Positions 275 through 50,800 of a stretch of 64,000 bases of DNA are shown piece by piece. How positions within the stretch are numbered: the first letter of the stretch is position 1; each line of letters begins with the position of its first letter. Origin of the DNA: Macrostomum lignano. Its lineage: Eukaryota. The position numbers were made by a program, and so were the translations under genes. The notes below the pieces were generated by a model. The model did no database searches. It was given only the letters and a program-made list of their open reading frames with translations, and was not told the DNA's origin. The stretch lies in assembly GCA_002269645.1 (NCBI GenBank), contig NIVC01000868.1:248001-312000 (forward strand), read 5' to 3'.

Positions 275-3200
275 AGATTGAAGAGCCAATCAGAAGGCAG
301 CGAGAGGGAGGAAGATTGAAGAGCCAATCAGAAGGCAGCGAGAGGGAGGGAGATTGAAGAGCCAATCAGAAGGCAGCGACTACAAAGGAAAGACCTCGGC
401 GCCGTGGTGGAACCCGGAGCTGGGGAAACTCAGGCGGAAGGCCAAAAGCCTTCATCGCCGTGCCATGAAGACCGGAAACCCGGAGGACATGGAGCTTTTC
501 CGGCAAGCCTCCCGCAATTTCAAATCTGAAGTGCGCAAGGCCAAGGAATGTAAGTGGCGCTAATTCTGCAATGAATTGGATCAAGACAGACCTACTTCTA
601 GGCTTGTCAAGGCCCTTACAATGGACAAAATGTCCAAATTAGCCATGATCAAAAAAGATGATGGCTCTCTTACTAAAGACCCTGAAGAAGTGCTTCAGCA
701 TATGCTCAGCACATTCTTCCCGAGGGTACCTACTGCTAGACCGGAGCCCAACCATTCGATGGATGGAGCCACCCTAGCGGCGGGCATTGTCACTGAAGAC
801 CTAATCGCTCGTGCAGTCAGAACCTTCAAACCCTTCAAATCTCCTGGACCTGATGGTATCTACCCTGTTCTCCTTCGTGAAGCAGCCAAGATACCCTCGT
901 TCCTGAGACTCACCCGCAATCTTATGCGGGCCTCTATCCAGCTGGGATACGTTCCCAAATGCTGGACTGAAGCTCGGGTAGTCTTTATTCCCAAACCTGG
1001 GAAGGGTGACTACCAAAGCGTCAAGGCCTTTCGGCCTATTAGCTTAACGTCAGCAATGCTTAAGCTCACTGAGAGGCTTATTCTCTGGCGGCTGCTGTCC
1101 TGCGAGCTGACAGCGATGCCCCTCAGCAATAATCAGCACGCCTTCCGTACCGGGAGGTCGACTGACAGCGCCCTGCATGCGATTGTCGAGAAGATTGAAA
1201 GGGCGGTACTGGGTGACGGTTACGCTCTGGCTCTCTTTCTTGACATTGTTGGCGCCTTCGACAACGTTATCTTTGAAGCGTTTCAGAGGGCCCTTCAAAA
1301 TCGCAAAGCTCATGCTACCCTCATACGGTGGATCATGTACATGATCTCAAACCGTACGGTCACTGCCCAACTTCTTGGGCAAACTGCCTCCACCAGAGTC
1401 TGTAAGGGTGGACCCCAAGGCGGAGTCCTCACCCCGACGCTCTGGAACCTGGTCATGGACGCTCTTTTGAGTGACTCCCGACCCGACCCCGTCTTCAAAG
1501 TCGGGTATGCTGATGACGTCACGGCCATTGTGGCAGGACCGTCTCCCAGCACGCTCAGGGATCTGATGCAGAGCTTTATCCGCAAAGCAGAATCCTGGGC
1601 CAATGACAATGGTCTGGAACTCTCTGAGCCCAAAACCGTTGCCATTATGTTTACCAGCAGACTACGCTGGAACATACGTCCTCTGCAGCTCTACGGCAGA
1701 GATATTGCCTTCGCGCACCAGACCAGATGTCTCGGGGTCATACTTGACCACCGGCTCAACTGGTCCTCCCACGTGAAAGCAAAAGCCAAGCGTGCCTCAG
1801 CCATCCTGGCCCAGCTCCGACGAGCACTTGGCACTTCTTGGGGTCTATCCCCAAAGCGGCTTTGGTGGATCTATACTTCCGTAGTTAGACCTGCCATTAC
1901 GTACGCCTCTGTTGTCTGGGTTAGCGCTACCCAGGTCAAAAGCCATGCAGACCTGCTCAACACGATCCAAGGCAGAGCGTGTAGGCTCATCTGCAACGCC
2001 ACCAGGTCCACGCCCTTTGCTGGCATGGGGGCCTTCCTTAATCTTCCGCCTCTTGACCTCTTCATCAGGGGTGAGGCGGCTAGAACGACGCGGCGTCTAA
2101 TTGATGCCGGCGTCAAATTCATTTACATGAGAGCACCTGCTAAGCGGAACCTTGTCCCGCATAGCGATCTGTGCCTCAACTTTCTCAACGAGTGTCAGGC
2201 CAATCGCGTCTTCACCGATGGCATTGCCTCAACGCTCAACCTGAGACAGCGCTACTCCGTAGCTATCGACTCGCGCGATAACATCAATGACCAATGGAAC
2301 CCTGGTGAGCTTCATTGCTACACCGACGGTTCTAAGCAGTCAGCCAACACCGGCTTTGGTGTTGGAATCTTTCTGAACGGGAGGGTCATCGCTACCCACG
2401 CTCAATACACTGGGGTCAACTCCAGTGTTTTCCAAAATGAAGTTCTGGCCATCAGCTCCTGCACTGCAGAGCTTCTCGCCACTGGCGTTACGGTAAGAAC
2501 ATCATTTTCCATTCGGACAGCCAAGCTGCCTTGCACGCCATCAGTGGCTGCAGCACCAACTCTGCTACAGTCCTCGACTGTATCAAACTCCTCAACGTGT
2601 TGGGTTCCGCCAACAAAATTACCCTTAAGTGGGTTCCGGGGCATGTGGGGATCCGAGGAAATGAGTTGGCTGACACCCTTGCAAAAGTTGGTGCCTCCGG
2701 CTCCTCTCTCGGCCCCGAACCTCTTGTCCCGATTCCTGGCTGTGTCATCGACTCGCGCATCAAAGCGTGGATCAGGACTCAGCACCGCTCGACTTGGGCG
2801 AACCGCACGAACTGCAGGCAATCCAGAGGCGCTGTCCCTCAGCCCTCTCACCAGCTCCGGAAGCTTCTTGCGCCTCTCGCGCAGAGACATCCGGGCTGCC
2901 ACCATGACCCTCTCTGGTCACGGCTGCTTCTCCAGGCACCAGTACCTGCAGGGCAACGCCACCAACGCCACCTGTAGTTTCTGCAACTCAGGTGACGAAA
3001 CCGCTGAGCATTTCGTCAGCATCTGTCCCGCCTTCACGCGGGCCAGACTCACTTACCTCGGGCCACACACATCTATTACTGAAGCGCGCAAACCCGAAAA
3101 CTTTAATCAGCTCATGCGCTACCTTCGGGCCACCCGCGCGCAGGGCTGAAGGGCTCTCCTTTCCAGAGAGCACTATAGCTGCTGGCGACACTGGGGGACC

Positions 3201-6700: not shown

Positions 6701-9700
6701 TTCCATCCAGGTCCCAAGGTATCAATCAGGTTCCATCCAGGTCCCAAGGTATCAATCAGGTTCCATCCAGGTCCCAAGGTATCAATCAGGTTCCATCCAG
6801 GTCCCAAGGTATCTGTGGCGGAAAGTGCAATTCATTATTTTCAATCAATTACTCCATCTCAATCTGCGCCGACTCTATTATGCCCGCACATTGATTTTCT
6901 CCAAATACGCCCGTATCGATTTAATGTACGCAAATGCGATGTACGCAAGCCAGGTGAACTTACTCTTTTTTACACGGCCTTCATTAACTATTTAATAAAT
7001 AAACTGTAGCCCAGTGAGGCTCGGATCGTGTTTTTTTGTGCATAGCGCAGCGTCGCTAAAAGTTCAATCCAAATTGACTACAATTCAACTACATGGCGCC
7101 CGAACAGTGAAATTCTACTAGCTATGATTCAGCAAACCGCGCTTTGAGGTTCAGGCTTGGGATCGGAGCTACAGGAATCGTCTGAATCTGCTCAACAGTT
7201 CCTACGTCTTCAAGGCTCCTGTCGGCATCCGTTTCTGGGTCCTGAGGTTCATCAACAAGAGCATCTTCGTGAAACTCCTTCGGCTGCGCGGACTTGTTGA
7301 GAAATTTTCTGTTTTTTGCTAATTCATTTGACTTATAATCAAATTTCCCGTTTGTGTTTTTAAGCGAAGATTAGTTTTTTGTTAGATTATACCCACTGTC
7401 TTTTTTGCTCTTCTCGTGCCTCATATCTGCTCGGCTTTTGCTTCCTTCTTTCTTTCATCTGTCCTCTCGCCTGTCTCTGCTCTGTTTTTCTCAGCCTTTG
7501 ATGGAGGAGTTCAAGAAAGACCGCGCTGTGCTGCGTCGTTCGGCTACGTTGCTGGTGGAAAAGATTCAGGCGGTTTTGGCTGGAGCAGAGAAATCAGAGG
7601 ATGAGGTAAATGGTTTGCTGCGCTTGGTGGTGACGAAGAAAACTGAGCTGGAAAAAGTCGACAAGCAGATTTTGCGCGAATTTGTTACAGACGATGGTGA
7701 GCCAACTGACAAGCTGCAGGAAGAGACGGAAAAATGTGACGAGTATATGCTCAAATTAGAAAGAGCGGCTGCAGGTCTAGAGCGGATTCAGGAGAAAAGA
7801 TTTAAACCGGTGGCTGCCCCATCTTCAATTGGTTCAGGAAGCCCAGCGTCAGCTGTCGGTTCCAAAGTAATACCAGAGACGGCTGATCGCAAGTGCAATG
7901 TGAAGCTGCCGAAGATGAGTCTGCCTATTTTTGACGGGAGCGATCCAACTCAGTGGCCCAACTTTAGTTCGCAGTTCAACTCATCAATCCACCAGAATTT
8001 GCATCTGTCAGATGTCGAAAAATTTTCATATCTTCAGAGCTGTCTAAAGGGTGAAGCACGACGATGCATCGAGAACTTTAAACTTACGACGGGTGACTAC
8101 CACAACGCCTGGGAGTTGCTGGAAGATAGGTATGGGTCTCCAGATAACCTCATTCAACACTTCATGAAGAGGCTCGAGACAGTCCGATGCGCGTGCGATT
8201 CCACTGTAGCTCTACGCTCATTCTTAGACGTCGTGAGATCCAGCGTCCGAGCCCTAGAAACTTTAGGAGTGGCTACAAACAACTACGAAGTGCTACTTCT
8301 GCCGAATCTGGAAGCTAAGCTGCCCGGATCAATTCGCGCTGACGTCATGCGCCCAATTCTGACTAGAACTTATAGAAAACCGTCAAATCTGGAAAACTTC
8401 TTAGATGCACTCGACGACGAAATTAAACTCCGTGATCGATGTGCCCTGGGCTCAGGCAGATCAGGCGACCAAAGCCGACACACGCCAGAGATACGTTGTT
8501 CTGTAGCAGGACCTACTCAGAAGTTTTCATGCGACCAAGATTCGCATCCCTCTTCGTTCGTCACGCATCATCCGGCGTCAAAGGAGCAGAACAAAGCAGC
8601 AGAGAGTCAGCAATCGGATTCAGCGCAAAATTCCGTTTCGTGCACTTACTGTCGTCAGGGTCACTATTCCGATTCTTGCACGGTTGTTCCCACAGCAAAG
8701 GAGAGGATAGAGATTCTGAAAAAGGAGAGACGCTGCTTTTGCTGCCTACGACCGAACCATCCTTCCAGTCAGTGTCGATCGAAGAGAGCTTGTCGCCATT
8801 GCGGTAAAATGCATCACCCGAGCGTCTGCCTGACTTCCCATCCTGGCGAAGCGCATCCTGCGATGACGAAAGTGGGAGCTGGGCACGTAGATCAGCAGAA
8901 AATAGTAACTCCACCGAACTGCAGTAGCACAACAGCCGTGACCATACCATGCGAGGACAAGACAATCTCTGAGAGTCAATCCCTTGTCGTGCACTCCAAT
9001 CCTGCAGTGATCATGCCGACTGCTAAGTGTCTCATCATCAGTTCGGATGGCAAAACCGAAGTTCTGGTCCGTGCGCTCTTTGACACCGCCAGCAATAAAA
9101 CTTATATCAGACAAGATTTAAGTCTGCAGCTGGACCTTGCAGTTGAGGCAACGGAAATTTTGCGGGTCAACACATTTGGATCCAGCAGCACTGAATTCAC
9201 ATCAAGCATCGTCAGATTTAGCATTCGCAAAGCCAACTCTCTGGACGAAGATTATGTGACTCTGAGAGGCTACACGACTCCTCGGATCTGCGAACCTCAG
9301 GCATCGGCGATGTGCGACGCTCATCCAGAACTCCAGCGTCTTGATCTGGCGGATCCATTTGACCCTCGCGATGCTAATGAGCCGATATCTATCTTGATTG
9401 GTGCCGATTGCTACTATGATTTGGTGGACGGCGACATCATTAGAACAGTGAGCGGCAATGGTCCAGTCGCCGTTAAGAGCAAACTTGGCTATCTGGTCAC
9501 CGGCAGATTGAGAATTGCTGACACGCTTTGTGCTTCCTCGTCCGCATGCGCGATGCACTGTTCCGGAGAATCCCTAATGGAGGGTATGCTGGCAGATTCC
9601 ACAAGCAGTGAACTAGATCCGGTGAGGGCGAAACGGCCATTCCCTCCAAGTCTGGAATTTGAGCAAGGTAGATACTCCATCGGTCTGCCATTCAGGGATG

Positions 9701-12700
9701 GATGTCGAAAACTTCTCAGTGACAATTTTGGTCTCGCCTACCGACGGCTAAGATCAACTGCGGAAAAGCTGCGTCAGACAGGAACAATCGACGAGTATGA
9801 CAGGATCCTGCAGGAACAGCTGAACAGTGGCGTCATAGAGCCTGTGCCATCTGACAGTGATCCCGAATCAATCCAGCACTATCTGCCGCATTTGCCGATT
9901 GTCAAAAAGGACAGTTCGACGACGCGACTTCGTATCGTCTTTGATGCGAGCGCCAAGTCTGCAGCCGGCTGTTCGTTGAACGACGTATTGGAACAGGGTC
10001 CTTGCCGCTTGCCGTCTGTGGCTTCTTTGCTGCTTCGGTTCAGGACTCATCCTGTCGCGATGATAAGCGATGTTGAGAAAGCATTCCTGCAAGTTGTCAT
10101 TCGGGAGAAGGACCGCGACGCGGTTCGGTTCCTGTGGCTTACACATCCTCATCAGAAAGAGTCCACGATTCGAGTACTTCGCTACGTACGTCTCGTGTTC
10201 GGCTTGGTGAGCAGTCCGGCCATTCTCCAAGAGGTGCTTCTCTATCACTTTCGAAACACGCAAAAGGCTTCGCCGGACACCATTAAACGGCTGGCGATGG
10301 ACACGTACGTGGACAATCTCGTGACTGGGTCTGATTCGGCCGGCTCAGCGATTTTGATCTACAAACAGACCAGAGAAGTATTCGAAGAAGCTTCAATGAA
10401 TATCCGAGGATGGATATCCAATTCAGCAGAGCTAAACAAAGTTTTCGATAAGGATGGCACTGGTGTTCAAAACTCTTCTACGGTCAAGGTTCTGGGCATG
10501 CTTTGGGATCCGAAAGAGGACAGTTTCGTGCTTTCAATCCACGATCATCCTACTCTAAACATTCGGAATGCAGAACTAACAAAGCGCTCGACGTTGTCGG
10601 CATTCTCAAAGACTTTCGACCCCTTGGGTCTACTCAGTCCTCTTCTGACACGTCCTCGATTGCTGTTTCAGCAGAGTTGTCGCTTGAACTTGGGCTGGGA
10701 CATGCCGCTTCCGGAACCGCTCAGGAGTCAATGGCACGAGTGTTTCAGCGAGTTGGAAGGCTGGAATTGTTGCATCGACAGGCCTCTTGCTACATCAACA
10801 CCAATCGCTTCCGAAATTCATGGTTTCTGCGACGCCTCCAAGGTGGCGCACGCAGCCTGCGTCTTCCTGAGGTCTACTTTCGAGTCTGGTGAGGTTAGGG
10901 TGTCGCTGCTCATGGCCAAGTCGCGTGTCGCTCCCATCGCTGAGACGACCATCCCTCGACTAGAACTGATGGCAGCCAGAGAACTGGCTCACATGATCAT
11001 TGAGGTTCGTAAAGAATTTCCTGATGCCGCCGTAATCTGCTGGAGTGACAGCATGGACGCGTTGTGGTGGATAAAGTCGGAACACAAAACTTGGAAGATG
11101 TTCATCCAGAACCGCGTTGTGTTCATTCGGTCAGTGGTTCCACCGGACAGTTGGAGACATTGCCCTGGGAAAGAAAATCCTGCTGACATTGCGACTCGTC
11201 CCATCACTACGGAATTGCTCGACAATCGCTCCTGCTGGTTTTGTGGACCTACTTGGCTGTGGTCCGACTCTTCAACATGGCCGGTTCAGCCAGATTTTTC
11301 TGACAAGTCTAGCCTGGATGACAGCTCCACTCATTGTGTGACTCTGGAAGTCGTCGACCCTCCGGAACCTCGTATTCGAATAGACGAAGTGATAGACTTG
11401 CCGAAGTTCAGCAGTTTAGAGAGACTTCTCCGAGTGACAGCGTGGGTCCTCCGCTTCGTCACATCGCTGAGGAATCGCACCCGTGCCTTGTCGGCTACCT
11501 TAACTGCTGCCGAATTGCATTCCGCTGAGAAGCTATGGATTCGTTCTCTTCAGGCAAAAGCCTTCAGTCCGGAGATACAGTGCATCACTAAAAACTCCGC
11601 GAAGACACCATTAATCCTGAATCTCCGCCTGTATCTGGACAGCGACGACGTCCTTCGCTGCTCAGGACGCCTGGGTGAATCGGATATAGCGCCGGATCAG
11701 AAGTCACCGATTTTATGTCCTACGGATGTAAACTTTCAGCAAATACTTACTGAGCATGCTCACGGGAAGGTGGCTCACGGGGGAGTTGCAGCTACGTTGG
11801 TGCAGATTCGCGAGAAGTATTGGATGCTGAAGGCTCGGCAGAAAGTTAAATCTACTCTACGGCGTTGCAACACCTGCATCCGGCTCCAGGGTTTGCCGTA
11901 CAAAGTTGGTCAGCAGTCGCAGTTACCCCTGTCAAGAATCGAATCGCTGAGAGCTTTCCAGCATGTTGGCCTGGACTACTGCGGTCCGCTTTTCTACCGC
12001 AGGGGGAGGGAGATGGCCAACAAAAAGCCTACATCCTGCTTTTTGCCTGCATGGGCACCCGAGCGGTCCATCTTGAAGTGACCACAGATTTGACTACTCA
12101 ATCTTTTCTGCAGAGTCTTCGTCGCTTCTGTGCTCGTCGCGGGATTCCGTCAATCATTTCGGACAACTTCAAGACTTTCCACGCAGCCGCGCGACTACTA
12201 GACGCCCACACGGCGCCCCTTCAAACCACAGGAGGTCAAGAGTTTTTAGCCGCCAAAAGAATCTGCTGGTCGTTTATCCCAGAAAAAGCACCATGGATGG
12301 GCGGATTCTACGAGCGATTGGTTGGTGTCGTGAAGTCGGCTTTGAAAAAGACCGTCTGCAAAGCCTTTCTCACTCTGGACGAGTTAACAACAGTTGTGTG
12401 CGAAGTGGAGGCAGTTGTGAATTCAAGACCACTCGGGTTCGTCTCGTCCGAAGCGCACGCGGAAGTGATCACGCCGAGTCATTTTCTTGTGCTGCATCGC
12501 CTGACAAAAGAACCAGAAGCGAATCCGAAAGGCCAAACAGTCCTGCCTCTTCCAGAGCGTCTGAGCAAAGTGCGGCGGATGCTGACCAAATTCTGGCGAG
12601 AATGGTTGAATGAGTACATCGTGGCTCTGCGCGAGCGTTCAGCAAGGAAGGAAGGACGAACTTCTGATCGCATAATCAAGGTCGGAGATGTCGTTTTGGT

Positions 12701-14836
12701 GATGGACGCCGGCGTGCCGAGGCTGCAATGGAAGCTGGCGGTTGTGGAAGCGGTACATCATGGCCGTGATGGCGTTGCTAGGTCGTGCCTCCTGAGGTTA
12801 GCTAGTCCGCATCGTAGTCGCGCTGCTGTGCATTTTCGGCGGCCGGTGGCGTCGCTGGTTCCTCTGGAGGTCTAAGCCTGTCTCTTTCTTTCTTTGATCT
12901 TGTCTCGTGCTGTCTCGCCGTCGATCTCTCAGTCTATCTTTGTCTGCGTTTGCGTCGTCTAAATTCTGCGAGCTATCTGTAGCCACTGCGTGATTAGTTA
13001 CTGATTCTGTTTCACTTGCATGATTTTTGCTGGCAATCAAATAATGCCTCTTGGTGTCGTAAGTACCTACGCAAATTCGACGCACTATTTTTAATCCGCA
13101 ATTAATCATAGTTTTGTTTGATTTTAATGTTCCAATTTTTGATTGTCTTTGTGTCAAGGCACTTATTTCCAATATCAAATATTTTCTCGAAGTGCATTCG
13201 CTTGTTTAGCTCGAAAATTTGTATTCGATAAAAGAACTCGCATTCGATGTCTCGTCTTTATTTTCAGTGAAAGTTAGACTTTGCAGCCCTTTCCTTTTTA
13301 GCCAGAGGTCTTGAGTTCGAACCTCTGGCGGGGGAGTGTGGCGGAAAGTGCAATTCATTATTTTCAATCAATTACTCCATCTCAATCTGCGCCGACTCTA
13401 TTATGCCCGCACATTGATTTTCTCCAAATACGCCCGTATCGATTTAATGTACGCAAATGCGATGTACGCAAGCCAGGTGAACTTACTCTTTTTTACACGG
13501 CCTTCATTAACTATTTAATAAATAAACTGTAGCCCAGTGAGGCTCGGATCGTGTTTTTTCGTGCATAGCGCAGCGTCGCTAAAAGTTCAATCCAAATTGA
13601 CTACAATTCAACTACAGTATCAATCAGGTTCCATCCAGGTCCCAAGGTATCAATCACGTTCCATCCGAACACAGTTATCAATCAGGTTCCATCTAGGCCA
13701 CAGTTATCAATCAGGTTCCATCTAGGCCACGGGTATCAATCAGGCCTCGCTCACCTGCTCCGCCTCCTGATTGGCTGCAGCCTCGGCGGCCTCGACCCGC
13801 TCCCTGACGGCCTTGGCGGATTCCTCCAGGGCGCGGCGCAGCTCCACCTCCCGCTTGGCTGCCGCGCGAAGCTCCTCGCAACTGCGCCGGAATCGCTCCA
13901 GCGAGGCCTCCTGCGAGTCCGTACGGATTGCCAGCTCGGACTGAAGTTCGGGGGGGGGAGAATCGTCAATTTCTGGTGCTGGACTCCGCCACCAACCCAC
14001 CAACTGAATCCGCGCTCACCTCGCGCTGCTTGAGCGCCTCCTCGCTGGCCAGCAGCTCCTCGACTTTCAAGCGGAGCTGCTCGGCCTCCGACTTGGCCGC
14101 GTCCCGCTCTTGAGCAGCGGCCTGAAGCTGCTTCTCCCAGGTGGCGTACTCGGCCTGGGGGTGGGCAAGCGAGCGGTTGTGAAATTTGCAAACTCTGAAC
14201 AGCCAGCAAGCGAAGGCAAAAAGTTTCTGTGCGTCAAAATGTTGGTAAAGTTTGAAGAAAAATTCTCCATTTTTCATGTGATATCGCAACTTCATCAACT
14301 GCACAGCCTCGAGCAAAACATTTGCAGGCCTAATTTGGCGATTCAGTCAGTCTGAAAGAGAACGAACTGCACTTGCTGACCTAATTTGGCGATTCAGTCA
14401 GTCTGGAAGAGAGCGAACTGCACTTGCTGACCTAATTTGGCGATTCAGCCAGTCTGAAAGAGAACGAACTGCACTTGCTGACCTGGAACAGCCGCTTGGC
14501 CTGGCCCAGCTTGCCGGTGATTTCGCTCTGCGCTCGCAGCGTCCGCTCCCGCTCCGCCTGCACGGCCAGCAGCTGCTCCCGCACGCTGCGCACGCTGCCC
14601 TCCAGCTCGCGGATTCGAGCCACGAGCACCTCCCGGGGAGTTCGCTGGCAGCGACTGCTGCTTGTCAGGCTGCTCACTGAGCCGCGCGGTGACTGGAGGC
14701 CGCTGTTGCTGCCATTGTCATGGCAACCGCTGACGCTGCCGATATCGCTAAGTTCGCCGAGAATCTTTTTGCTCTCGGCTGCAGTCATCTGCAGCTTTTT
14801 CAGCAGGTTGTCAATTGTGTGCTCGTCAACTTCCAT
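3774..14836 (-). CDS. Long coiled-coil protein, 3' end outside the window (at least 741 aa)
   Basis: Exons 14483-14836, 14020-14154, 13755-13940, 5345-5884, 4603-5025, 4311-4511 and 3774-4157. All introns are GT-AG and phase 0, giving a continuous E/A/R/L-rich heptad frame. The last exon ends at a donor (CAG|GTGTGT), so the gene continues leftward. Confidence 0.85.
5945..6813 (+). repeat. 18-bp minisatellite (CAGGTATCAATCAGGT[T/C]C), intronic; continues at 13617-13741
   Basis: Dozens of tandem copies, interrupted by the LTR element. Confidence 0.95.
6814..13616 (+). mobile_element. Full-length BEL/Pao LTR retrotransposon
   Basis: 280-bp LTRs at 6814-7093 and 13337-13616 (TG...CA), one mismatch seen. 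5-bp TSD GTATC. PBS TGGCGCCCGAACAG at 7094-7107. PPT at about 13327-13336. Confidence 0.97.
7501..12875 (+). CDS. BEL/Pao gag-pol polyprotein with one frameshift near 12001-12006
   Basis: DUF1759-like gag, three Cys/His knuckles, protease LFDTAS, RT YVDN, RNase H FCDAS, integrase HHCC, then integrase core (ISDN) and DUF5641-like tail in the -1 frame after a G5 run. Confidence 0.92.
14330..14482 (-). repeat. 3 x 51-bp tandem repeat at the start of intron 1; each unit reads GT...AG
   Basis: Units 14432-14482, 14381-14431 and 14330-14380 read GTCAGCAAG...TTCTCTTTCAG...CCAAATTAG. Confidence 0.92.
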
Positions 14837-43141: not shown

Positions 43142-43618
43142 TTAGCGCTTGCCGCCAACCCGTGGCGCGGTGGGCTTCATGACCTTGGCCGCCTTCTGCT
43201 TCTGGCCGGCGGGGCGGGACTGCTTGGCCTCTGCTTGCTTCTGCGCCTTCTTCTCGGCCTCCTTGGCCTTGGCCTTCTCCTTGGCGTTGCGGACCGCCTG
43301 CTCTCGCTGGGCCTTGCGGAACTCCGGCTTCTGGTTGCGCTTGGCCATGAGGTCGGCCATGGACAGGCCGGCCACCGCCCGGATGGCCTTGTGCGACTTG
43401 CGCGACTTCTTCTTCGCGGCCTCCTCCACCTGGCCCTTCTTGTGCTTGCGCCGGTACAGCACAGTCCAGCTGACCTCGCGCGGATTTTTCTTCTGAAAGT
43501 GGGAGCGCTCGCACTTCGAGTTTAGGAAGTGGAAGGTCTTGCCATCGGTGCGGATCAGCCAGCGGCCGCGGCCGGGGTACACCTTGAAGCCGGAGAAGCT
43601 GCACAGCTCAAGCTTCAT
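43142..43618 (-). CDS. RPL24: 60S ribosomal protein L24 (eL24), intronless CDS, 158 aa
   Basis: [48 protein letters not shown]. Acceptor CTGTTGCAG 11 nt upstream of the ATG; AATAAA at 43013-43018 (minus). Confidence 0.98.
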
Positions 43619-43872: not shown

Positions 43873-43953
43873 TCAGAATCGACTGGCAATATCAGAGCAA
43901 CTTTTGAAGCTGCTGGCTTCATTCCGCCCGACGCCGATATGGGAGCTCATCAC
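43873..43953 (-). ncRNA. Box C/D snoRNA, copy 2
   Basis: GUGAUGA...CUGA with the same two guides; the internal linker differs. Confidence 0.75.
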
Positions 43954-44095
43954 GGCTGGTGCGATGCAGGAATTCAAACATTAACTCGCAGACCTACGCA
44001 GTAGAGGAAACACAAGAGTCTGAACTTAGAGAACCTGTTTGACCTGACTACTAAGTACTAACGCCAGGTTTAATCGTCTTAAAAATCACACCCGC

Positions 44096-44182
44096 TCAGA
44101 ATCGACTGGCAATATCAGGACCCGGCTGTTTTACAAGCCAGATTGAGTCATTCCGCCCGACGCCGATATGGGAGCTCATCAC
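44096..44182 (-). ncRNA. Box C/D snoRNA, copy 3
   Basis: GUGAUGA...CUGA with the same two guides. Confidence 0.75.
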
Positions 44183-44315
44183 GGCTGGTGCGATGCAGGA
44201 ATTCAAACATTAATTCGCAGACCTAAGCAGTAGAGCAAACACAAGAATCTGAACTTAGAACCTGTCTAACCTTCCCATTACCGTCAGGTTTAATCATCTA
44301 AAAAATCACACCCGC

Positions 44316-44402
44316 TCAGAATCGACTGGCAATATCAGGACCCGGCTGTTTTACAAGCCAGATTGAGTCATTCCGCCCGACGCCGATGTATGAGCTCATC
44401 AT
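44316..44402 (-). ncRNA. Box C/D snoRNA, copy 4
   Basis: AUGAUGA...CUGA with the same two guides. Confidence 0.75.
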
Positions 44403-44832
44403 AGCTGGTGTGAGTTGATGTTTTAAGGTATAAAGCCTAGGCTATCAGTAAACTCGATATCAAATAAAAAGCAAGTCGAAAAAGGACATATTAAGAGTTG
44501 AAGGCAAAGCAAGGCATGTGAATAATAGCAATGCAAACATGCTTGGCAATGAATTCTCTGTGCGAGCAGCTCAGCCCTCAATGGGCAGTGAGAACTGCTG
44601 CGGCAGTCACTGAATAGAATCTGATAGAAGCGTCACTGAACCGAAATAAAATGATTAAAAAACGCAGAACCAGTGCAATGAAATCCTGGAGACATAAAAA
44701 ATCAAAGACTAAAAAATGGCTCAAACACCTGTCCAATTACAGCCGCACATCAGGCAGAGAAAGCATCACAGAACAAAAAGGATTTGGAACAGAGAAAGCG
44801 CAGACCCTGGCCCGATGGCCGTCAGCTCACTG

Positions 44833-44905
44833 GGCGAGCATCGATCAGCGAGGCCTGGGCTTCCGACTGGGCGGCTTTGCGCCGGGCCGCTTCATTCTGG
44901 CCACC
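44833..44905 (-). promoter_or_regulatory. SECIS element candidate (form 2)
   Basis: AUGAA (44891-95), 12-nt GC-rich helix, AAA (44876-78), mini-stem CCG/CGG, UGAU (44844-47); about 520 nt downstream of the in-frame UGA. Confidence 0.6.
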
Positions 44906-44983
44906 GGCCCGGGTCCGCGATGGGGGAGACAACGGTATCATAGGGGCTGTACTTTAGATTGCCCTAGCAGTAGTATATGCCAA

Positions 44984-45055
44984 GGGGGCAAATCAACTCA
45001 GTGGATGACGCGTCTGACTTAAGCGACACAGCGCCCGAGTTCGATTCTGCGCTCG
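44984..45055 (+). other. tRNA-like Pol III A/B-box segment (possible SINE head)
   Basis: AACTCAGTGG (44995-45004) and GAGTTCGATTC (45037-47) at tRNA-like spacing; no complete cloverleaf. Confidence 0.3.
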
Positions 45056-45418
45056 CATGTGGCTCCGGTCAGCAAAATGGGCATAAGTGCTGAGGTAGTG
45101 TCAAAGCTCCCCCAAAACTTTCCAACTCAACCAACCGCTTGTCTGCCACTCGAGTCTGAATCGAATTCTTTGAAATACTTCGCGTTCAACGCTAGCATTG
45201 ACCCCCACTCGACAGTACTCACTGCTAAGGCTGTATTGTACAAGAGTTCAGTTACGCACTAATTGGGACATACAAGTTCAAAAACTCCATTTAACCGCGC
45301 CAGCCAACTGTCGAGGCCGCAACCCGGCATTCGGTCCGGGCCCGGCCTGCAGCGGAATGCCGCCCCTTTCAAAGCCTCTGGAGGGGAAGGGGCGGCCATT
45401 CCCAGCTGGGAGGCGCAG

Positions 45419-45952
45419 TTAGCTTCATCCACCACCCGCGCTGGTGCAGGGCGGCGGGCGGTAGCGGGCCGCCGCTCCCGAGTCGCCGACCAGCGGGTTG
45501 TACTCATTGCGAAGGCGTCGCTTGCCGCCGCCGCTGCCGCCTCCAGAGGCATTGCGCCGCTGCTAAGCGGCGGAGACGGCGTCGGCCTCGTCGCCAGTGT
45601 ACTTCAGCAGCGAGCGGCGATTGCGGCCAGGTTGGCCAGGCACGTAGCCGGCAGAGGCTGAGGCGCTGTTGGCAGCGGTGGCCTCCACCTGCTTGGCCTC
45701 CCGCTGCTCTGCATCCAGCTGCAGCTGGCGGAGCTGTCTCTCGCGGGCCTCGGCAACGCGGGCCTGTCTGACTGCGAACTCCTCGCTGTCAGCCGCCGAG
45801 TCCGACCGCTTGGCGGCAGCGGCGCGGGCGCGCTGGGCGGCAGCGGCTGCCGCGGGCCGAACGTAGCGCGAGTAGATGAAAGCGGCAGCGCAGACTCCGA
45901 TGAGGAGAGGCCAGCCGTAGGTGGCCAGGAAATCTGCGGCCGCGTTTAGCAT
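45419..45952 (-). CDS. SELENOS: Selenoprotein S (VIMP)-like protein with C-terminal GGG-U-S
   Basis: N-terminal TM (TYGWPLLIGVCAAAFIY), coiled coil RQARVAEARERQ, and in the same frame RLRNEYNPLVGDSG..RYRPPPCTSAGGG-TGA(45425-27)-AGC-TAA. An in-frame TAG at 45563-65 is probably the acceptor of a 126-nt intron (45563-45688). Confidence 0.8.
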
Positions 45953-46149
45953 GGCTGGATTGGACTGGGGCTGCTTCAGTAGGGAGTCGAGAGCTGCGGG
46001 TGGGTGCGCAAGTTAATATGCGCTGCGGGATCAATTGCTCTAATGACACTTGGGACAAAGTGTGCCGTTGCTAAGGCACTGGAAAGCGGATGTGTGGCTG
46101 CTAGGAATACTGGAAACAGTCTAATAGGGGTGCGGTTGCTAAGTTCATT

Positions 46150-47035
46150 AGGAGTTGCTAAGTTCAACAGGATGTGAGGTTGCTAAGGACACAAGGAACA
46201 TGATGTGGGGTTGCTAACGACACAGGGAACATGATGTGGGGTTGCTAAGGATACAGGGAACAGGATGTGGAGTTGCTAAGGATACAGGGAACAGGATGCG
46301 AGGTTGCTAAGGACACAGGGAACAGGATGTGGGGTTGCTAAGAGCACAGGGAACATGTGGTTGCTAACGACACAGGGAACATGATGTGGGGTTGCTAAGG
46401 ATACAGGGAACAGGATGCGAGGTTGCTAAGGACACAGGGAACAGGATGTGGGGTTGCTAAGAGCACAGGGAACATGTGGTTGCTAACGACACAGGGAACA
46501 TGATGTGGGGTTGCTAAGGATACAGGGAACAGGATGTGGGGTTGCTAACGGCACAGGGAACATGATGTGGGGTTGCTAACGGCACAGGGAACATGATGTG
46601 GGGTTGCTAACGGCACAGGGAACATGATGTGGGGTTGCTAAGGTCACAGGGAACATGATGTGGGGTTGCTAACGGCACAGGGAACATGATGTGGGGTTGC
46701 TAACGGCACAGGGAACATGATGTGGGGTTGCTAAGGATACAGGGAACAGGATGCGAGGTTGCTAAGGACACAGGGAACATTATGTGGGGTTGCTAACGGC
46801 ACAGGGAACATGATGTGGGGTTGCTAACGGCACAGGGAACATGATGTGGGGTTGCTAAGGATACAGGGAACAGGATGCGAGGTTGCTAAGGATACAGGGA
46901 ACAGGATGCGAGGTTGCTAAGGACACAGGGAACATTATGTGGGGTTGCTAACGGCACAGGGAACATGATGTGGGGTTGCTAACGGCACAGGGAACATGAT
47001 GTGGGGTTGCTAAGGATACAGGGAACAGGATGTGG
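46150..47035 (+). repeat. 31-bp minisatellite (GTTGCTAA[G/C]G.CACAGGGAACA.GATGTGGG)
   Basis: About 28 copies upstream of the selenoprotein gene. Confidence 0.95.
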
Positions 47036-47829
47036 GTATACAATATAGTCTGAGCAACTGAACATCTCGTGAAACAGCGGCAAGGACGACCAATTTCGGC
47101 AGCAGATTTAATAGAAGCAGTAGCAGTCAATTCCGTACATACATAATAGATTAATTTGAAAAGCTAATGTATTTATAAACACTATTACATAGGCATTTAT
47201 GTCTACAAAATGAAACAGTATATAGGGATAAAACCAACAGAAACGTACTTGCAGGTCTTGCATTAGTTTACTTATGCATTCGAATATATCATAGAACAGG
47301 GCACGCATACAATATGAGTTTCGCTAGGGATTACAGAAATTGGTAACATTATTATACAGTAGCATTGCATATGCATGTAAGTACATGGTGTCCTACTTAG
47401 CAGCGACAGGCCGGGATGGAGACTAAAAACCGGTGCCGTTAATGACAAAGAGCAGAAATATTTAGCCAGACAGGTGCGCACAAACGCTCCGGCCTCTAGC
47501 AAGAGTAAGCAGGAAATGGAGAAAAAGATGACGCAATAAATAACCGCTCTTTAATTAAAGTTCGCACTCGCGCACATGTACAAATCAACTTACACGAACC
47601 AATCGAATACCTGATAAATTTCCAACTGGTTGTAGAAGCCGCGAGTACGGGGAGACCCTAGAAACAGAGCGCACAGGTTCGCTGAATGAGCAAAATGCCA
47701 AGTGAATTACACAGACAAATGGAGTGCCAGTTGGAACTGCGAACGCATCCGGGATGCGAAGTTCAGCGCACACGAGATAATCAAGCAACAGTTGCAGGCG
47801 ATTTGACTGCGTCAAGGACAGGGGAGAAC

Positions 47830-50800
47830 TCAGTCGAACTGGGTGTTGAGCAGCTCCTGCAGAAACTCTAGCGTGATGCCCTGGCCTCCGTGCTCAACCT
47901 GCAGAGTGGAGCCGTCGGGCTTGGTGATGAGCAGCACGGTGTCATCCAGATCCTGCAGGGTCACCCCGGGGAACATGGCGCTCAGGTCGATCTGCACGGC
48001 TTCGCCCGTGTCGGCAGCCACCGCGGACGCCACCGCCGCATGCTGCCCGTCCACTGCTGCCTCCGGGGCCGCCGCCGCAGCATCACCTTCAGTCGGCTGC
48101 TCGGCATTGGCACCGGAAGCGGCGGCCTGAGCATTGTCGCCGCCGCCAACTGCCGCCTTGGCCTCCGAAGCTCCGTCCACCGCACCATTCTTGTCGGCGG
48201 CATCCTTCGCGGCTCCGGCGTCTGGCTTCGCTGCAGCAGCAACATCCGACGAAACTTCCTCAGCTGCGGTGGCGGCGGAACCCTTGCCGGCCGAAGCTTT
48301 CGAAGGCGAGGCACCAGCAACTCCAGTGACCGTTACAGCGCCAGCAGACGAGGTGGCGGCCAGGGTGACTGCGCCAGCGGGCTGCTCAGCCAAGTCTGCC
48401 GACTCCTGCATCACGGCGATCTGCTCGCCAGTGATGCGGTTGAAGAACTGTCCGGTGGCCACCTCGATCACGAAGTCTGACGGCTGGCCGTTCTCGTCCA
48501 GCACCTGTGGGCGGCGATCAACCAAGATGCTTGAGCACTGGCGGCATTCATTGAAGATATTCAATGATTCGCTCACAATAGCTCTTATCTCTTCTCCCAG
48601 TGATCCCCGCAATCAGTTCCCATATCACAAATCTTCATTTTCAGGCATTTCAAATCCAAGAGCTCTGGATCCCCGATGGTCAACTGATCTCAGCTCAATT
48701 AGTACAGCCAGCGGCTCACCTGATAGTATCGCTCAACAGCGATGTCCTTGTCGGTGATGGCCGGCTGCCTCTGCGACTGCTGGCGAATCTGGGTGGACTT
48801 CGGGCCGATCTTCATGCTGAAACTGCCGGCGCTGGTGTCCGTCTGCACACCGGAGCCGCCGACGCTGGTGACAACGTCAGGTTCAACCGGGTGCGGCTGC
48901 AGAGTGGCGAAGCGGCTGGCCTGGCCGCCAGCCAAGTCCTGCTGCGCCTGCGACACGGCGGCAGCGGCGGCGCCCGGGCTGCGGCGGGACTGCAGTGAGG
49001 CGCGGTGCCTGGGAGGCAGGTAGCCCTCGTTGAAGGTGGGCCGCACGGTGTAGCTGCCTGCCTCCACGCCAAGGATGTCGGCCTTGGCCTGGCTGTCGAT
49101 GCACACGGAGCCGAGCGGGCGCGGCTCGCCAGTCGGAATTCGCACCAGGTGCTCCTTGAGAAATTTCCGGCTGATGTCGACCAGATTCACCTGAGAATAG
49201 CGGAGAGAGCAGCTCAGTTAAGGTTGGCGGCGGGAAGCAAGATGAAGGCTTTGAGCGAGCCACAGGCCACAGACAAGAATTTCACTGCGCCTTGCGCCTT
49301 CTGTGAATTCTGACAATTTTTTACAATACTATTGGATTTGCATTTACAATACTAAGCTTTCTAATAATCTTAGAAAACGGCCCAATGCCAAGAAGCTCGA
49401 CAAGACCGTCTTAAATGTCGAGGATGTCACCGCTGACAACTTTGTGAAATTCGCTCCAAAATACGCAAGACTCACCAGGTCGTCAACCAGCATGGCCAAA
49501 TTGGGCAGCGGCGGGTCGCCGCGCTCCGACTTCACAAGAAGGAAGTCGAACGGATTAGCCAGCTTAGCCAGCCGGGGCAGGCAGATGTCCACCAGCTCCT
49601 CATCCGTGCTGGTTTTCACCGCCGCTTTCAATGCGCTGCGCTTTCGCACCGGCACGTACTGGGTGCGCCGGGCATCGCGCTGCTCGTGGCGCAGCTGCAC
49701 GTGTTTGAGCAGCGCCTGGCGCGACATGAACTGCAGGTCGCAGCGGTCGCACTGGAAGATGATGGAGTCGTCAGGGTACAGGTAGCGGCCCGGCTTGCGG
49801 CCCTCCTCCTCGGCGATGGGATCAAAGTCCGGGTCCTCCTCCTCCGGCAGGCGCTTGCCGCGGCGCCGCTTCACGCCAGCCGGGCTGGCGCCGGTGTTGT
49901 CCAGGTCGCGGAGCAGCGACTTCGAGTTTGGGCTGAGGCCGGCGCGGCCGGCGGGGGTGCCCGACGGCTTTTGCACCTCGCTCATGATGGACTGGTTGTG
50001 CAGCACCTGCGACGGGCGCAAAAACAGCTCACATCAAAACATTATAGATAAGCTTGGGGATTGCAGTCAAGAAATCACGCCAGACCATAAATTATCTGCC
50101 TATCTCGGTAACTTCATTTGCAGATTCTAAGCCACTCAGATACTACTTGGAACCTGGCTCCCAGTCCAGAGCAAGTGTCTTATTGCTTTAAAGCAGGGGT
50201 CGGCAAACTTCTTTACCCCTAGTACAGATGCAGAATTCAGCTCAGGGCTGCGGGCCAGATGAAAGTGGAAAGGCGAGAAAATAGAAGAAGGGGAGGAGAG
50301 GAGAGGGGAGAGGAGAGAAGAGAAAGAAAAGGGGAGAGCTAAGAAGAGACATACCCTGAGCGGGCCAGATTGCTATCGTGGTTTCAAAGGACCCGAGGGC
50401 CGGAGTCTGCCGATCCCTGCTTTAAACATTCAAGTATCTTCACTTGTAAGGTTAACAATTGCCATTGTATATTAGAAAAAGCGCGTCATACTTAAATAAC
50501 CAACTACTGGCTACAGTAGTGTTGAAGCGAACAAGTAGGCACTGCACATTCCATTTCCCTCGATTGCTTGGCAGTTGGCATTACAGGCAGGTCCTGGGCT
50601 CACTTTCACCTACTTTATAATTGTACTTGGGATGCCATGGACACCATGGTACATCATCATGTTTATAGACAGACAGGTGAACAGGCCAATATTTCTCACC
50701 TGGGTGATCTGGCTAAGCTGCTCCTCGCTCAGGTTCTGCGTAGTAATAAATCGATTGCCCTGCTGAATGATTCTAATAGGATTTTTATTGGATCCCAGCG

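What the first reader, a model, noticed from the sequence alone, without database searches (positions are those of the whole stretch)
44833..45952. Hidden selenoprotein: SelS-like gene with terminal GGG-UGA-S, SECIS candidate and an in-frame UAG
Seen: the ORF track stops at TAG 45563-65, but the same frame continues into the SelS-type tail (YNPL..RYRP..GGG) and ends UGA-AGC-UAA. A SECIS-like hairpin (AUGAA, 12 nt, AAA, UGAU) lies about 520 nt downstream. Established: SelS and SelK carry Sec near the C-terminus, and SECIS directs UGA recoding. Inference: the UAG is most simply the acceptor of a 126-nt phase-0 intron (CAG|GTGGAG..CCGCTTAG), giving 135 aa. Retaining it would yield a 129-aa Sec-less isoform, a possible splicing switch for selenium dependence. 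UAG readthrough (177 aa) is a less likely alternative. Automated annotation would probably miss the Sec.
Basis: partly seen in the sequence, partly recalled or inferred. Interest (0 to 1): 0.72.

Follow-up and report, generated by a model that had tools for sequence, protein, structure and literature searches.

The report
Flatworm selenoprotein S gene with a stop
This is the selenoprotein S gene of the flatworm Macrostomum lignano, ordinary in kind, but both assembled copies have a stop codon (UAG) inside the coding sequence, not in an intron, before the selenocysteine tail.

Summary
An ORF starts at ATG 45952 and meets an in-frame TAG at 45565-45563. The same frame then runs on to GGA-TGA-AGC-TAA (TGA 45427-45425).

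The protein is a clear selenoprotein S (SelS). It scores 43 bits against Pfam PF06936. Eleven relatives align with it end to end. Every relative transcript ends GG(R)-UGA-NNN-stop, just as here. The contig comes from the flatworm Macrostomum lignano.

The proposed 126-nt intron is not supported. That stretch has the base composition of coding sequence and holds a conserved SelS motif. Removing it lowers the family score from 91 to 73 bits. Every other in-frame GT-AG deletion also lowers the score. The TAG therefore sits in the coding linker, and it is present in both assembled copies.

The SECIS-like hairpin (44905-44833) has all the required motifs and is the only candidate in the 1.8-kb 3' region. 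It is irregular, and neither Rfam nor my SelS-SECIS models score it above background, so it remains unproven.

Most likely this is a nonsense-interrupted SelS gene that mainly makes a 129-aa protein without Sec. UAG readthrough, an assembly error and splicing remain open.

The parts
45566..45952 (-). SelS coding sequence, codons 1-129 (ATG 45952 to GCT 45566). It holds the N-terminal membrane helix with the FLATYGW motif and the coiled-coil/VCP-interacting region (invariant R70, R72).
   Evidence: ORF list and translation; Pfam PF06936; alignment A1 with invariant W14, R70, R72
45563..45688 (-). I read it as coding linker (codons 89-130) that ends in the TAG.
   Evidence: GC by codon position is 0.69/0.62/0.79, like the flanking CDS. 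G109 sits in a near-invariant column. Removing it lowers the family HMM score from 91.0 to 73.1 bits and splits the match in two.
45563..45565 (-). In-frame TAG (codon 130), followed by C (UAG-CAG-CGG). It lies in the length-variable linker of the family.
   Evidence: Also present in the second assembled copy L002.
45428..45562 (-). SelS C-terminal tail in the same frame (codons 131-175): KRRLRNEYNPLVGDSGAAARYRPPPCTSAGGG. It keeps all invariant family residues (N152, P153, L154, G156, R165, P166) and a Cys 7 residues before the UGA.
   Evidence: Alignment A1; tail-only domain scores of 23-31 bits
45425..45427 (-). TGA at the position of the family's Sec codon (penultimate codon)
   Evidence: The relatives' predicted proteins end exactly here. 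Their transcripts read GG(R)-UGA-NNN-stop.
45419..45424 (-). AGC (Ser) and the final stop TAA
45342..45418 (-). Long, nearly perfect stem-loop that starts right after the stop codon. Its position matches the proximal stem-loop of mammalian SelS 3'UTRs.
   Evidence: Fold of -41.5 kcal/mol, z = -1.78, 7 of 200 shuffles as good. Similar proximal hairpins occur in L008 and L011 but not in four other relatives. PSL described in PMC3628699 and PMC6844570.
44833..44905 (-). SECIS-like element, unproven. Helix I is GGUGG/UCGCC and the core is AUGA 44895-44892. Helix II has 12 bp with three interruptions. AAA is unpaired 13 nt after the core, followed by a 3-bp mini-stem. The 3' core is UGAU, with GA at 44846-44845.
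   Evidence: Scanner and constrained folds; shuffles. Against.
44289..44294 (-). First AUUAAA downstream of the SECIS-like element (a second lies at 44074-44069). There is no AAUAAA anywhere between the stop codon and the RPL24 gene.

Best explanation
This is the selenoprotein S (SELENOS/VIMP) orthologue of the free-living flatworm Macrostomum lignano.

Shown:
- The coding sequence is a single exon, collinear with SelS from tunicate, tick, fish and mammal across its whole length.
- It ends in the family's signature ...GGG-UGA(Sec)-X-stop.
- The TAG at codon 130 is not intronic. It lies inside coding sequence, in the length-variable linker between the EGKGYRSK-type motif and the YNPL/RYRP tail.
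- The TAG is present in both assembled copies.

Inferred:
- As assembled, ribosomes mostly stop at UAG. They would make a 129-aa, tail-less protein without Sec that keeps the membrane anchor and the VCP-interacting coiled coil.
- The Sec tail, the stem-loop just after the stop and the mediocre SECIS-like hairpin 530 nt downstream are then a very recently orphaned recoding module.
- That module could be reached only if a small fraction of ribosomes read through UAG-C.
For: - Family: Pfam PF06936 at 43.1 bits. Eleven relatives, 184-219 aa long, align in one stretch over residues 4-175. Several are named selenoprotein S.
- Sec position: the relatives' proteins end where the UGA is, and their mRNAs read GG(R)-UGA-NNN-stop.
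- No intron: composition; conserved G109 and linker length equal to the relatives' without splicing; 91.0 bits unspliced against 65.6-75.4 for every in-frame GT-AG deletion.
- The TAG is real in the assembly: the same stop-to-stop ORF occurs on two contigs. The copies differ here only by homopolymer single-base deletions.
- Weak SECIS.
- No intact copy: the protein collection holds no longer version.
Against: - The tail keeps every invariant SelS residue and a candidate resolving Cys. Any loss of constraint must therefore be very recent, or the tail is still translated.
- The only SECIS-shaped element in the 3' region has all the core motifs at correct spacing and beats 300 of 300 shuffles in my scanner.
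- No transcript, read-level or sister-species data could be reached. Splicing, a base-call error and readthrough are argued against only indirectly.
- UAG followed by C is, from general knowledge, a leaky termination context.
Confidence: 0.5

Rival explanations
1. Dual recoding. The UAG is read through at a useful rate, and the UGA is then decoded as Sec through the downstream SECIS. One mRNA would give both a truncated Sec-less SelS and a full-length 176-aa selenoprotein.
For: The frame stays open, and all invariant tail residues, the Cys and the UGA-X-stop layout are intact. The UAG is followed by CAG-CGG. This is a C at +4 and 5 of 6 positions of the CARNBA readthrough context, which I recall from memory and did not test. 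A SECIS-shaped element and a proximal stem-loop are present.
Against: The fold around the UAG is not significant (z = -1.64). No sister-species data show that the stop is conserved. The yield would be the product of two inefficient events. The SECIS is not validated.
Confidence: 0.15
2. Assembly or strain artefact. The living gene has a sense codon (for example CAG, TGG, TAC or GAG) at codon 130 and is an ordinary intact SelS selenoprotein gene.
For: The assembly is PacBio-based and shows single-base errors between the two copies. Everything else about the gene looks intact.
Against: The differences seen between the copies are homopolymer deletions, not substitutions. The TAG is identical on two independent contigs. 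A pair of compensating indels within 40 nt would be needed to fake it.
Confidence: 0.15
3. The TAG is removed by splicing, through the reader's 126-nt intron or another in-frame intron of 57-129 nt.
For: GT...AG pairs of in-frame length exist. The acceptor TCTCCGCCGCTTAG is pyrimidine-rich, and CAG|GTGGAG is a passable donor.
Against: The segment has coding composition and periodicity and holds a conserved family motif. Every such deletion lowers the family score by 16-25 bits and breaks collinearity. The donors lack G at +5.
Confidence: 0.1
4. A-to-I editing turns UAG into UIG (read as Trp) in a double-stranded context.
For: UAG is the preferred ADAR triplet (general knowledge). The codon lies inside a GC-rich extended hairpin.
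Against: In the predicted fold the A faces a G in an internal loop, and the fold is not significant. There is no data on editing in this species.
Confidence: 0.03

Closest known systems
Selenoprotein S (SELENOS/VIMP/SelS), Pfam PF06936. Named relatives were found here from Styela clava, Lepidogalaxias and Suncus, and one from Ixodes hexagonus is unnamed in its record.
   Same: A single N-terminal membrane helix with the YGW motif, a coiled coil with invariant R..R, a Gly-rich tail with YNPL and (Y/W)RP, and UGA as the penultimate codon.
   Different: An in-frame UAG at codon 130. There is no N-terminal segment before the membrane helix; relatives have 20-50 more residues. The Cys lies 7 residues before the Sec, against 14 in human.
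SelS of the planarian Schmidtea mediterranea (PMC3828610)
   Same: A free-living flatworm with one SelS selenoprotein gene. Parasitic flatworms have lost SelS.
   Different: I could not retrieve that sequence for a direct comparison. No interrupting stop is reported there.
Human SELENOS transcript variant 1 (PMC3628699)
   Same: The same locus yields a Sec-less, truncated SelS, which is the outcome I infer here.
   Different: In human the cause is splicing that removes the SECIS from the 3'UTR. Here it would be a stop codon 46 codons upstream of the UGA.
Proximal stem-loop / SPUR region of the mammalian SelS 3'UTR (PMC6844570, PMC3628699)
   Same: A stable stem-loop within the first ~90 nt after the UGA and stop codons.
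   Different: No sequence similarity was tested. The hairpin is only marginally better than shuffles and is absent from four of seven relatives.
Eukaryotic type-2 SECIS element (Rfam RF00031)
   Same: An AUGA...GA quartet, unpaired AAA 13 nt after the core, a mini-stem above it, and a location in the 3'UTR.
   Different: Helix II has three interruptions. Helix I has 5 bp, two of them G-U. No covariance-model support.

Membership tests
Selenoprotein S (PF06936) | Profile match above the curated threshold | tested here: met
   43.1 bits against a cut-off of 29.8. 91.0 bits against an HMM of 11 relatives that excludes this protein.
Selenoprotein S (PF06936) | N-terminal membrane anchor with the YGW motif, and a coiled coil with the conserved R-x-R of the VCP-interacting region | tested here: met
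   W14, R70 and R72 are invariant and G13 and Q74 near-invariant in alignment A1.
Selenoprotein S (PF06936) | C-terminal YNPL...(Y/W)RP...GG-Sec-X-stop, with UGA as the penultimate codon | tested here: met
   N152, P153, L154, G156, R165 and P166 are invariant. The window reads GGA-UGA-AGC-UAA. The relatives' transcripts read GG(R)-UGA-NNN-stop.
Selenoprotein S (PF06936) | Uninterrupted reading frame from the start codon to the Sec codon | tested here: not met
   TAG at 45565-45563 in both assembled copies. This is a defect or peculiarity of this gene copy, not of its ancestry.
Selenoprotein S (PF06936) | A functional SECIS in the 3'UTR and actual Sec insertion | tested here: inconclusive
   One motif-complete candidate without model support. 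Sec insertion itself cannot be tested in silico.
Eukaryotic SECIS element | AUGA / GA non-Watson-Crick quartet, with unpaired AA 10-13 nt above it | tested here: met
   AUGA 44895-44892, AAA 13 nt later, UGAU with GA at 44846-44845.
Eukaryotic SECIS element | Regular helix II and a stable helix I; a fold close to the minimum free energy | tested here: inconclusive
   Helix II has 12 bp with 3 interruptions. Helix I has 5 bp including 2 G-U. The constrained fold is 3.7 kcal/mol above the MFE, against -1.3 to +0.5 in five benchmark elements and +4.8 in a sixth.
Eukaryotic SECIS element | Significant covariance-model score | tested here: not met
   No Rfam SECIS hit in a 141-nt search. R1 gives 4.3 bits and R2 under 3.6 bits. 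Caveat: Rfam also misses 2 of 4 relatives' SECIS in the same regime, and R2 misses the L005 element.
   Coding-like GC3 of 0.79, a conserved motif inside it, and a loss of 18 bits on removal.
   No M. lignano transcript contig carries this gene in the collections searched.
Programmed stop-codon readthrough | Leaky context and a protein-coding signal past the stop | tested here: inconclusive
   UAG-C and an intact conserved tail. There is no conservation test of the stop itself, and the local fold is not significant.

The most novel reading that the evidence does not exclude
One flatworm mRNA undergoes two successive recoding events. UAG readthrough at codon 130 is followed by SECIS-directed Sec insertion at the penultimate UGA. 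UAG leakiness would then set the ratio of a Sec-less, p97-recruiting SelS to a redox-active selenoprotein form.
Probability: 0.12. Interest if true: 0.7.

Novelty: new member of a known kind. Interest (0 to 1): 0.3.

Why it matters
SelS is already known from a free-living flatworm (PMC3828610), so the gene itself mainly improves the annotation of a regeneration model organism. The stored gene call stops at the TAG and misses both the tail and the Sec codon.

The in-frame UAG is the only unusual part. If it is a true nonsense codon, this locus catches a selenoprotein gene at the moment it loses its Sec module, with the UGA, the tail and a SECIS-like hairpin still in place. If the UAG is read through, it would be a rare case of two recoding events on one mRNA. 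Public RNA-seq and genomic reads can decide between these cheaply.

Tried and rejected
- **Rfam scans.** Scans of 44000-46200 and of 44800-44940 gave no SECIS hit. I do not treat this as decisive. In the same regime Rfam found only L006 and L007 and missed the L005 and L008 elements.
- **Own covariance models.** R1 and R2 were built from relatives' SelS SECIS elements. R1 recovered the unseen L008/L009 elements (25.4 bits) and the L003 element (16.7 bits), but scored the window candidate at background. R2 also failed on the type-1 element of L005, so these models are narrow.
- **220-nt repeat copies.** Copies at 44371, 44151 and 43922 carry AUGA...AAAA...UGAU. I rejected them as SECIS because 2-4 unpaired bases separate the quartet from the helix and there is no internal loop (by inspection).
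- **Other scanner hits.** Hits at 4998 (-) and 41194 (+) look like chance.
- **tRNA.** ARAGORN found no tRNA, so the T-arm-like stretch in the 3'UTR is not a tRNA gene.
- **Closer relatives or transcripts.** Neither the word-seeded search nor the exhaustive HMMER search found any Macrostomum relative or spliced product. An exact-pattern scan of metagenome contigs across the TAG found nothing.
- **Neighbour-gene introns as a yardstick.** Pfam could not confirm the exon order. I use them only as an illustration of lower GC.
- **Literature.** The papers gave only mean intron lengths, not a short-intron profile.

Full report
**What is in the sequence.** The gene lies on the minus strand. An ATG at 45952 opens a frame that runs 129 codons to TAG at 45565-45563. 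The same frame continues for 45 codons: QRRNASGGGSGGGKRRLRNEYNPLVGDSGAAARYRPPPCTSAGGG. It then reads TGA (45427-45425), AGC and TAA (45421-45419). So is the string AUGA-A-12 nt-AAA...UGAU at 44895-44843, which is 530 nt after the UGA.

**Origin.** The stop-to-stop ORF is on record on two contigs of assembly GCA_002269645.1. Papers identify this assembly as Mlig_3_7 of the free-living flatworm Macrostomum lignano. The window is part of NIVC01000868.1. A second copy (L002, NIVC01004618.1) is about 99.6% identical over the gene, the 3' region and the neighbouring RPL24 gene. It carries the same TAG. In the gene and its 3' region it differs only by three single-base deletions, two of them (44926, 44525) further down the 3' region. 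The third removes one A of the TGA-A run at 45425; it leaves the TGA but shifts the two codons after it. These look like long-read consensus errors.

**Family.** Pfam PF06936 (Selenoprotein_S) matches above its curated cut-off, at 43.1 bits for the 177-codon conceptual product. An exhaustive HMMER search found 11 relatives of 184-219 aa. Each aligns in one stretch over residues 4-175, straight through the TAG position. Several are named selenoprotein S in their source records, from Styela clava, Lepidogalaxias and Suncus; one from Ixodes hexagonus is unnamed. In the alignment, W14, R70, R72, N152, P153, L154, G156, R165 and P166 are invariant. The relatives' predicted proteins all end ...GG(G) exactly where the window has UGA. 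At the nucleotide level, the transcripts or genes of these relatives read GGG-UGA-GGU-UAG, GGA-UGA-GGU-UAA, GGA-UGA-AAA-UAA, GGA-UGA-GGG-UAG and GGA-UGA-GGC-UAA. The window's GGA-UGA-AGC-UAA is the same arrangement, with Sec as the penultimate residue. A Cys lies 7 residues before the UGA, as in relative P0009. The identification as a SelS gene with a Sec-position UGA is secure.

**The proposed intron.** Four lines of evidence go against it.
- *Composition.* The 126 nt have 70% GC with a codon-position pattern of 0.69/0.62/0.79. The flanking CDS has 0.76/0.55/0.80 and the tail 0.73/0.73/0.78. The 3'UTR is flat at 0.55-0.59.
- *Conserved motif.* The segment encodes ...GQPGRNRRS.... Its G109 falls in a near-invariant column of the relatives' EGKGYRSK-type motif.
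- *Linker length.* The linker between that motif and LRxxYNPL is as long as in the relatives without any splicing.
- *Family score.* I built an HMM from the 11 relatives without the window's protein. The results are in the table.

| Variant | Family HMM score |
|---|---|
| Unspliced product | 91.0 bits, one domain |
| Every other in-frame GT-AG deletion containing the TAG (57, 69, 75, 81, 84, 129 nt) | 65.6-75.4 bits, match split each time |

Pfam shows the same direction, at 43.1 against 35.9 bits. I conclude that the TAG sits in coding sequence, in the variable linker, and that the CDS has no intron. The neighbouring RPL24 gene (43618-43142) is also a single ORF.

**What the TAG is.** I could not resolve this.
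- *Not simple noise.* It is on two contigs, and the errors seen between the contigs are homopolymer deletions, not substitutions.
- *No rescuing data.* The protein collections hold no longer or spliced version of the product and no close Macrostomum relative. There is therefore no transcript or sister-species evidence. An exact-pattern scan of metagenome contigs across the codon found nothing.
- *Tail intact.* The tail has lost none of the family's invariant residues. Either it is still translated at some level, or the stop is very young.
- *Context.* The codon is followed by C and by CAG-CGG. From general knowledge this is a relatively leaky context and a partial match to CARNBA. The GC-rich fold around it is not significant (z = -1.64).

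My best reading, at about even odds, is a genuine nonsense codon. The main product would then be a 129-aa SelS that keeps the membrane anchor and the conserved R-x-R coiled coil but lacks the redox tail. Human SELENOS variant 1 gives a comparable Sec-less outcome by removing the SECIS (PMC3628699). Readthrough, a base-call or strain artefact, and splicing are the rivals, in that order.

**The SECIS candidate.**

*For:*
- It has AUGA, unpaired AAA 13 nt later and UGAU.
- With the quartet left open, it folds into a type-2 shape. Helix II has 12 bp with three interruptions, and a 3-bp mini-stem sits above the AAA.
- It is the only hit of my stricter scanner in the 1.8 kb between the stop codon and RPL24. 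Only 13 of 300 dinucleotide shuffles gave any hit, and none gave one as good. Across the whole window, both strands, only two other hits were as good, and both look like chance.
- No AAUAAA precedes it, and the first AUUAAA is at 44294.

*Against:*
- The unconstrained fold does not form it, and the region is no more stable than shuffles (z = +0.67).
- Helix I has only 5 bp, two of them G-U, whereas the relatives have 8-14 bp.
- The full SECIS-like structure is 11 kcal/mol above the MFE. With only the upper part constrained, it is 3.7 kcal/mol above, against -1.3 to +0.5 for five benchmark elements and +4.8 for a sixth.
- Rfam reports no SECIS.
- A covariance model built from four relatives' SelS SECIS elements recovered unseen elements at 25.4 and 16.7 bits. 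It gave this one 4.3 bits, which is background. A six-sequence model did no better.

*Caveats:* Rfam also misses two of four relatives' elements in the same small-search regime. My second model misses the type-1 element of L005. My scanner thresholds were set after seeing the candidate.

*Verdict:* the candidate is plausible and is the only one, but it is not validated. I put the chance that it is, or recently was, the working SECIS at roughly one half.

**Other 3'UTR feature.** A 77-nt, nearly perfect stem-loop starts right after the stop codon (45418-45342). It folds at -41.5 kcal/mol with z = -1.78. Two of the seven relatives' 3'UTRs folded have a comparable proximal hairpin. Mammalian SelS has a proximal stem-loop and the SPUR element in the first 91 nt of its 3'UTR, and these modulate Sec insertion (PMC6844570, PMC3628699). 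The resemblance is one of position only.

**Comparison and novelty.** SelS is a known selenoprotein family. It has been reported from the planarian Schmidtea mediterranea and is absent from the parasitic flatworms examined (PMC3828610). I found no paper that treats M. lignano selenoproteins; the three papers holding both words are on other subjects. The gene is thus a new member of a known kind. The automated call missed it, stopping at the TAG. Only the in-frame UAG is out of the ordinary, and its most likely explanations are mundane.

**Scores.** Interest is 0.3. The most novel reading still open is dual recoding of UAG and then UGA on one mRNA. I give it about 0.12 probability, and it would deserve about 0.7 interest if true.

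Noticed in passing
window 46166-47036: An array of 28 tandem copies of a 31-nt unit (88% matches) lies directly upstream of the SelS start. A 19-nt two-copy repeat lies at 46135-46172.
   Followed up: no
window 43919-44410: A 220-nt tandem repeat (2.2 copies) lies in the SelS-RPL24 interval. Its copies (cores at 44371 and 44151, plus a related core at 43922) carry an AUGA...AAAA...UGAU string that superficially mimics a SECIS but lacks its geometry.
   Followed up: partly
window ~44990-45075 (+ strand): A stretch inside the SelS 3'UTR, on the opposite strand, resembles a tRNA T-arm and D-loop (GAGTTCGATTCTGCGCTCGC, TCAGTGG). ARAGORN calls no tRNA and Rfam gives no hit. It may be a tRNA-derived SINE remnant.
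   Followed up: partly
window 43142-43618 (-): An intronless ribosomal protein L24e gene lies 1.8 kb downstream on the same strand, ending in TAA. It could share a transcription unit with SelS, since polycistronic precursors are reported for this species.
   Followed up: no
window 576-3149 (+) and 7405-12875 (+): Retroelement ORFs. The first is an 857-aa reverse-transcriptase ORF. The second is a BEL/Pao-type polyprotein with DUF1759, RVT_1, Peptidase_A17 and an integrase zinc-binding domain.
   Followed up: partly
L002 (NIVC01004618.1), position matching window 45425: The second gene copy lacks one A of TGA-AGC. It would read TGA-GCT-AAC... and run on for about 50 codons after the Sec position. 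This is probably a homopolymer consensus error. If it is real, that copy has lost the Sec-X-stop ending.
   Followed up: partly
L003 1064-1117: The SelS transcript of an unidentified eukaryote (Logan SRR23076776) has a SECIS-model hit (16.7 bits) whose 3' core reads UAAU instead of UGAU. This is either a non-canonical quartet or an assembly error.
   Followed up: no
L005 895-941, L008 845-894: Relatives' SelS SECIS elements that Rfam SECIS_1 misses are picked up weakly by archaeal C/D-box sRNA models, presumably through the shared kink-turn motif.
   Followed up: no
window 47830-50021 (-): The upstream neighbour on the same strand has a C2H2 zinc finger and a weak DUF4764 match (27.5 bits). 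It shows a canonical-looking CAG|GTGAGC donor near 48718, followed by a stretch of lower GC (47%).
   Followed up: partly
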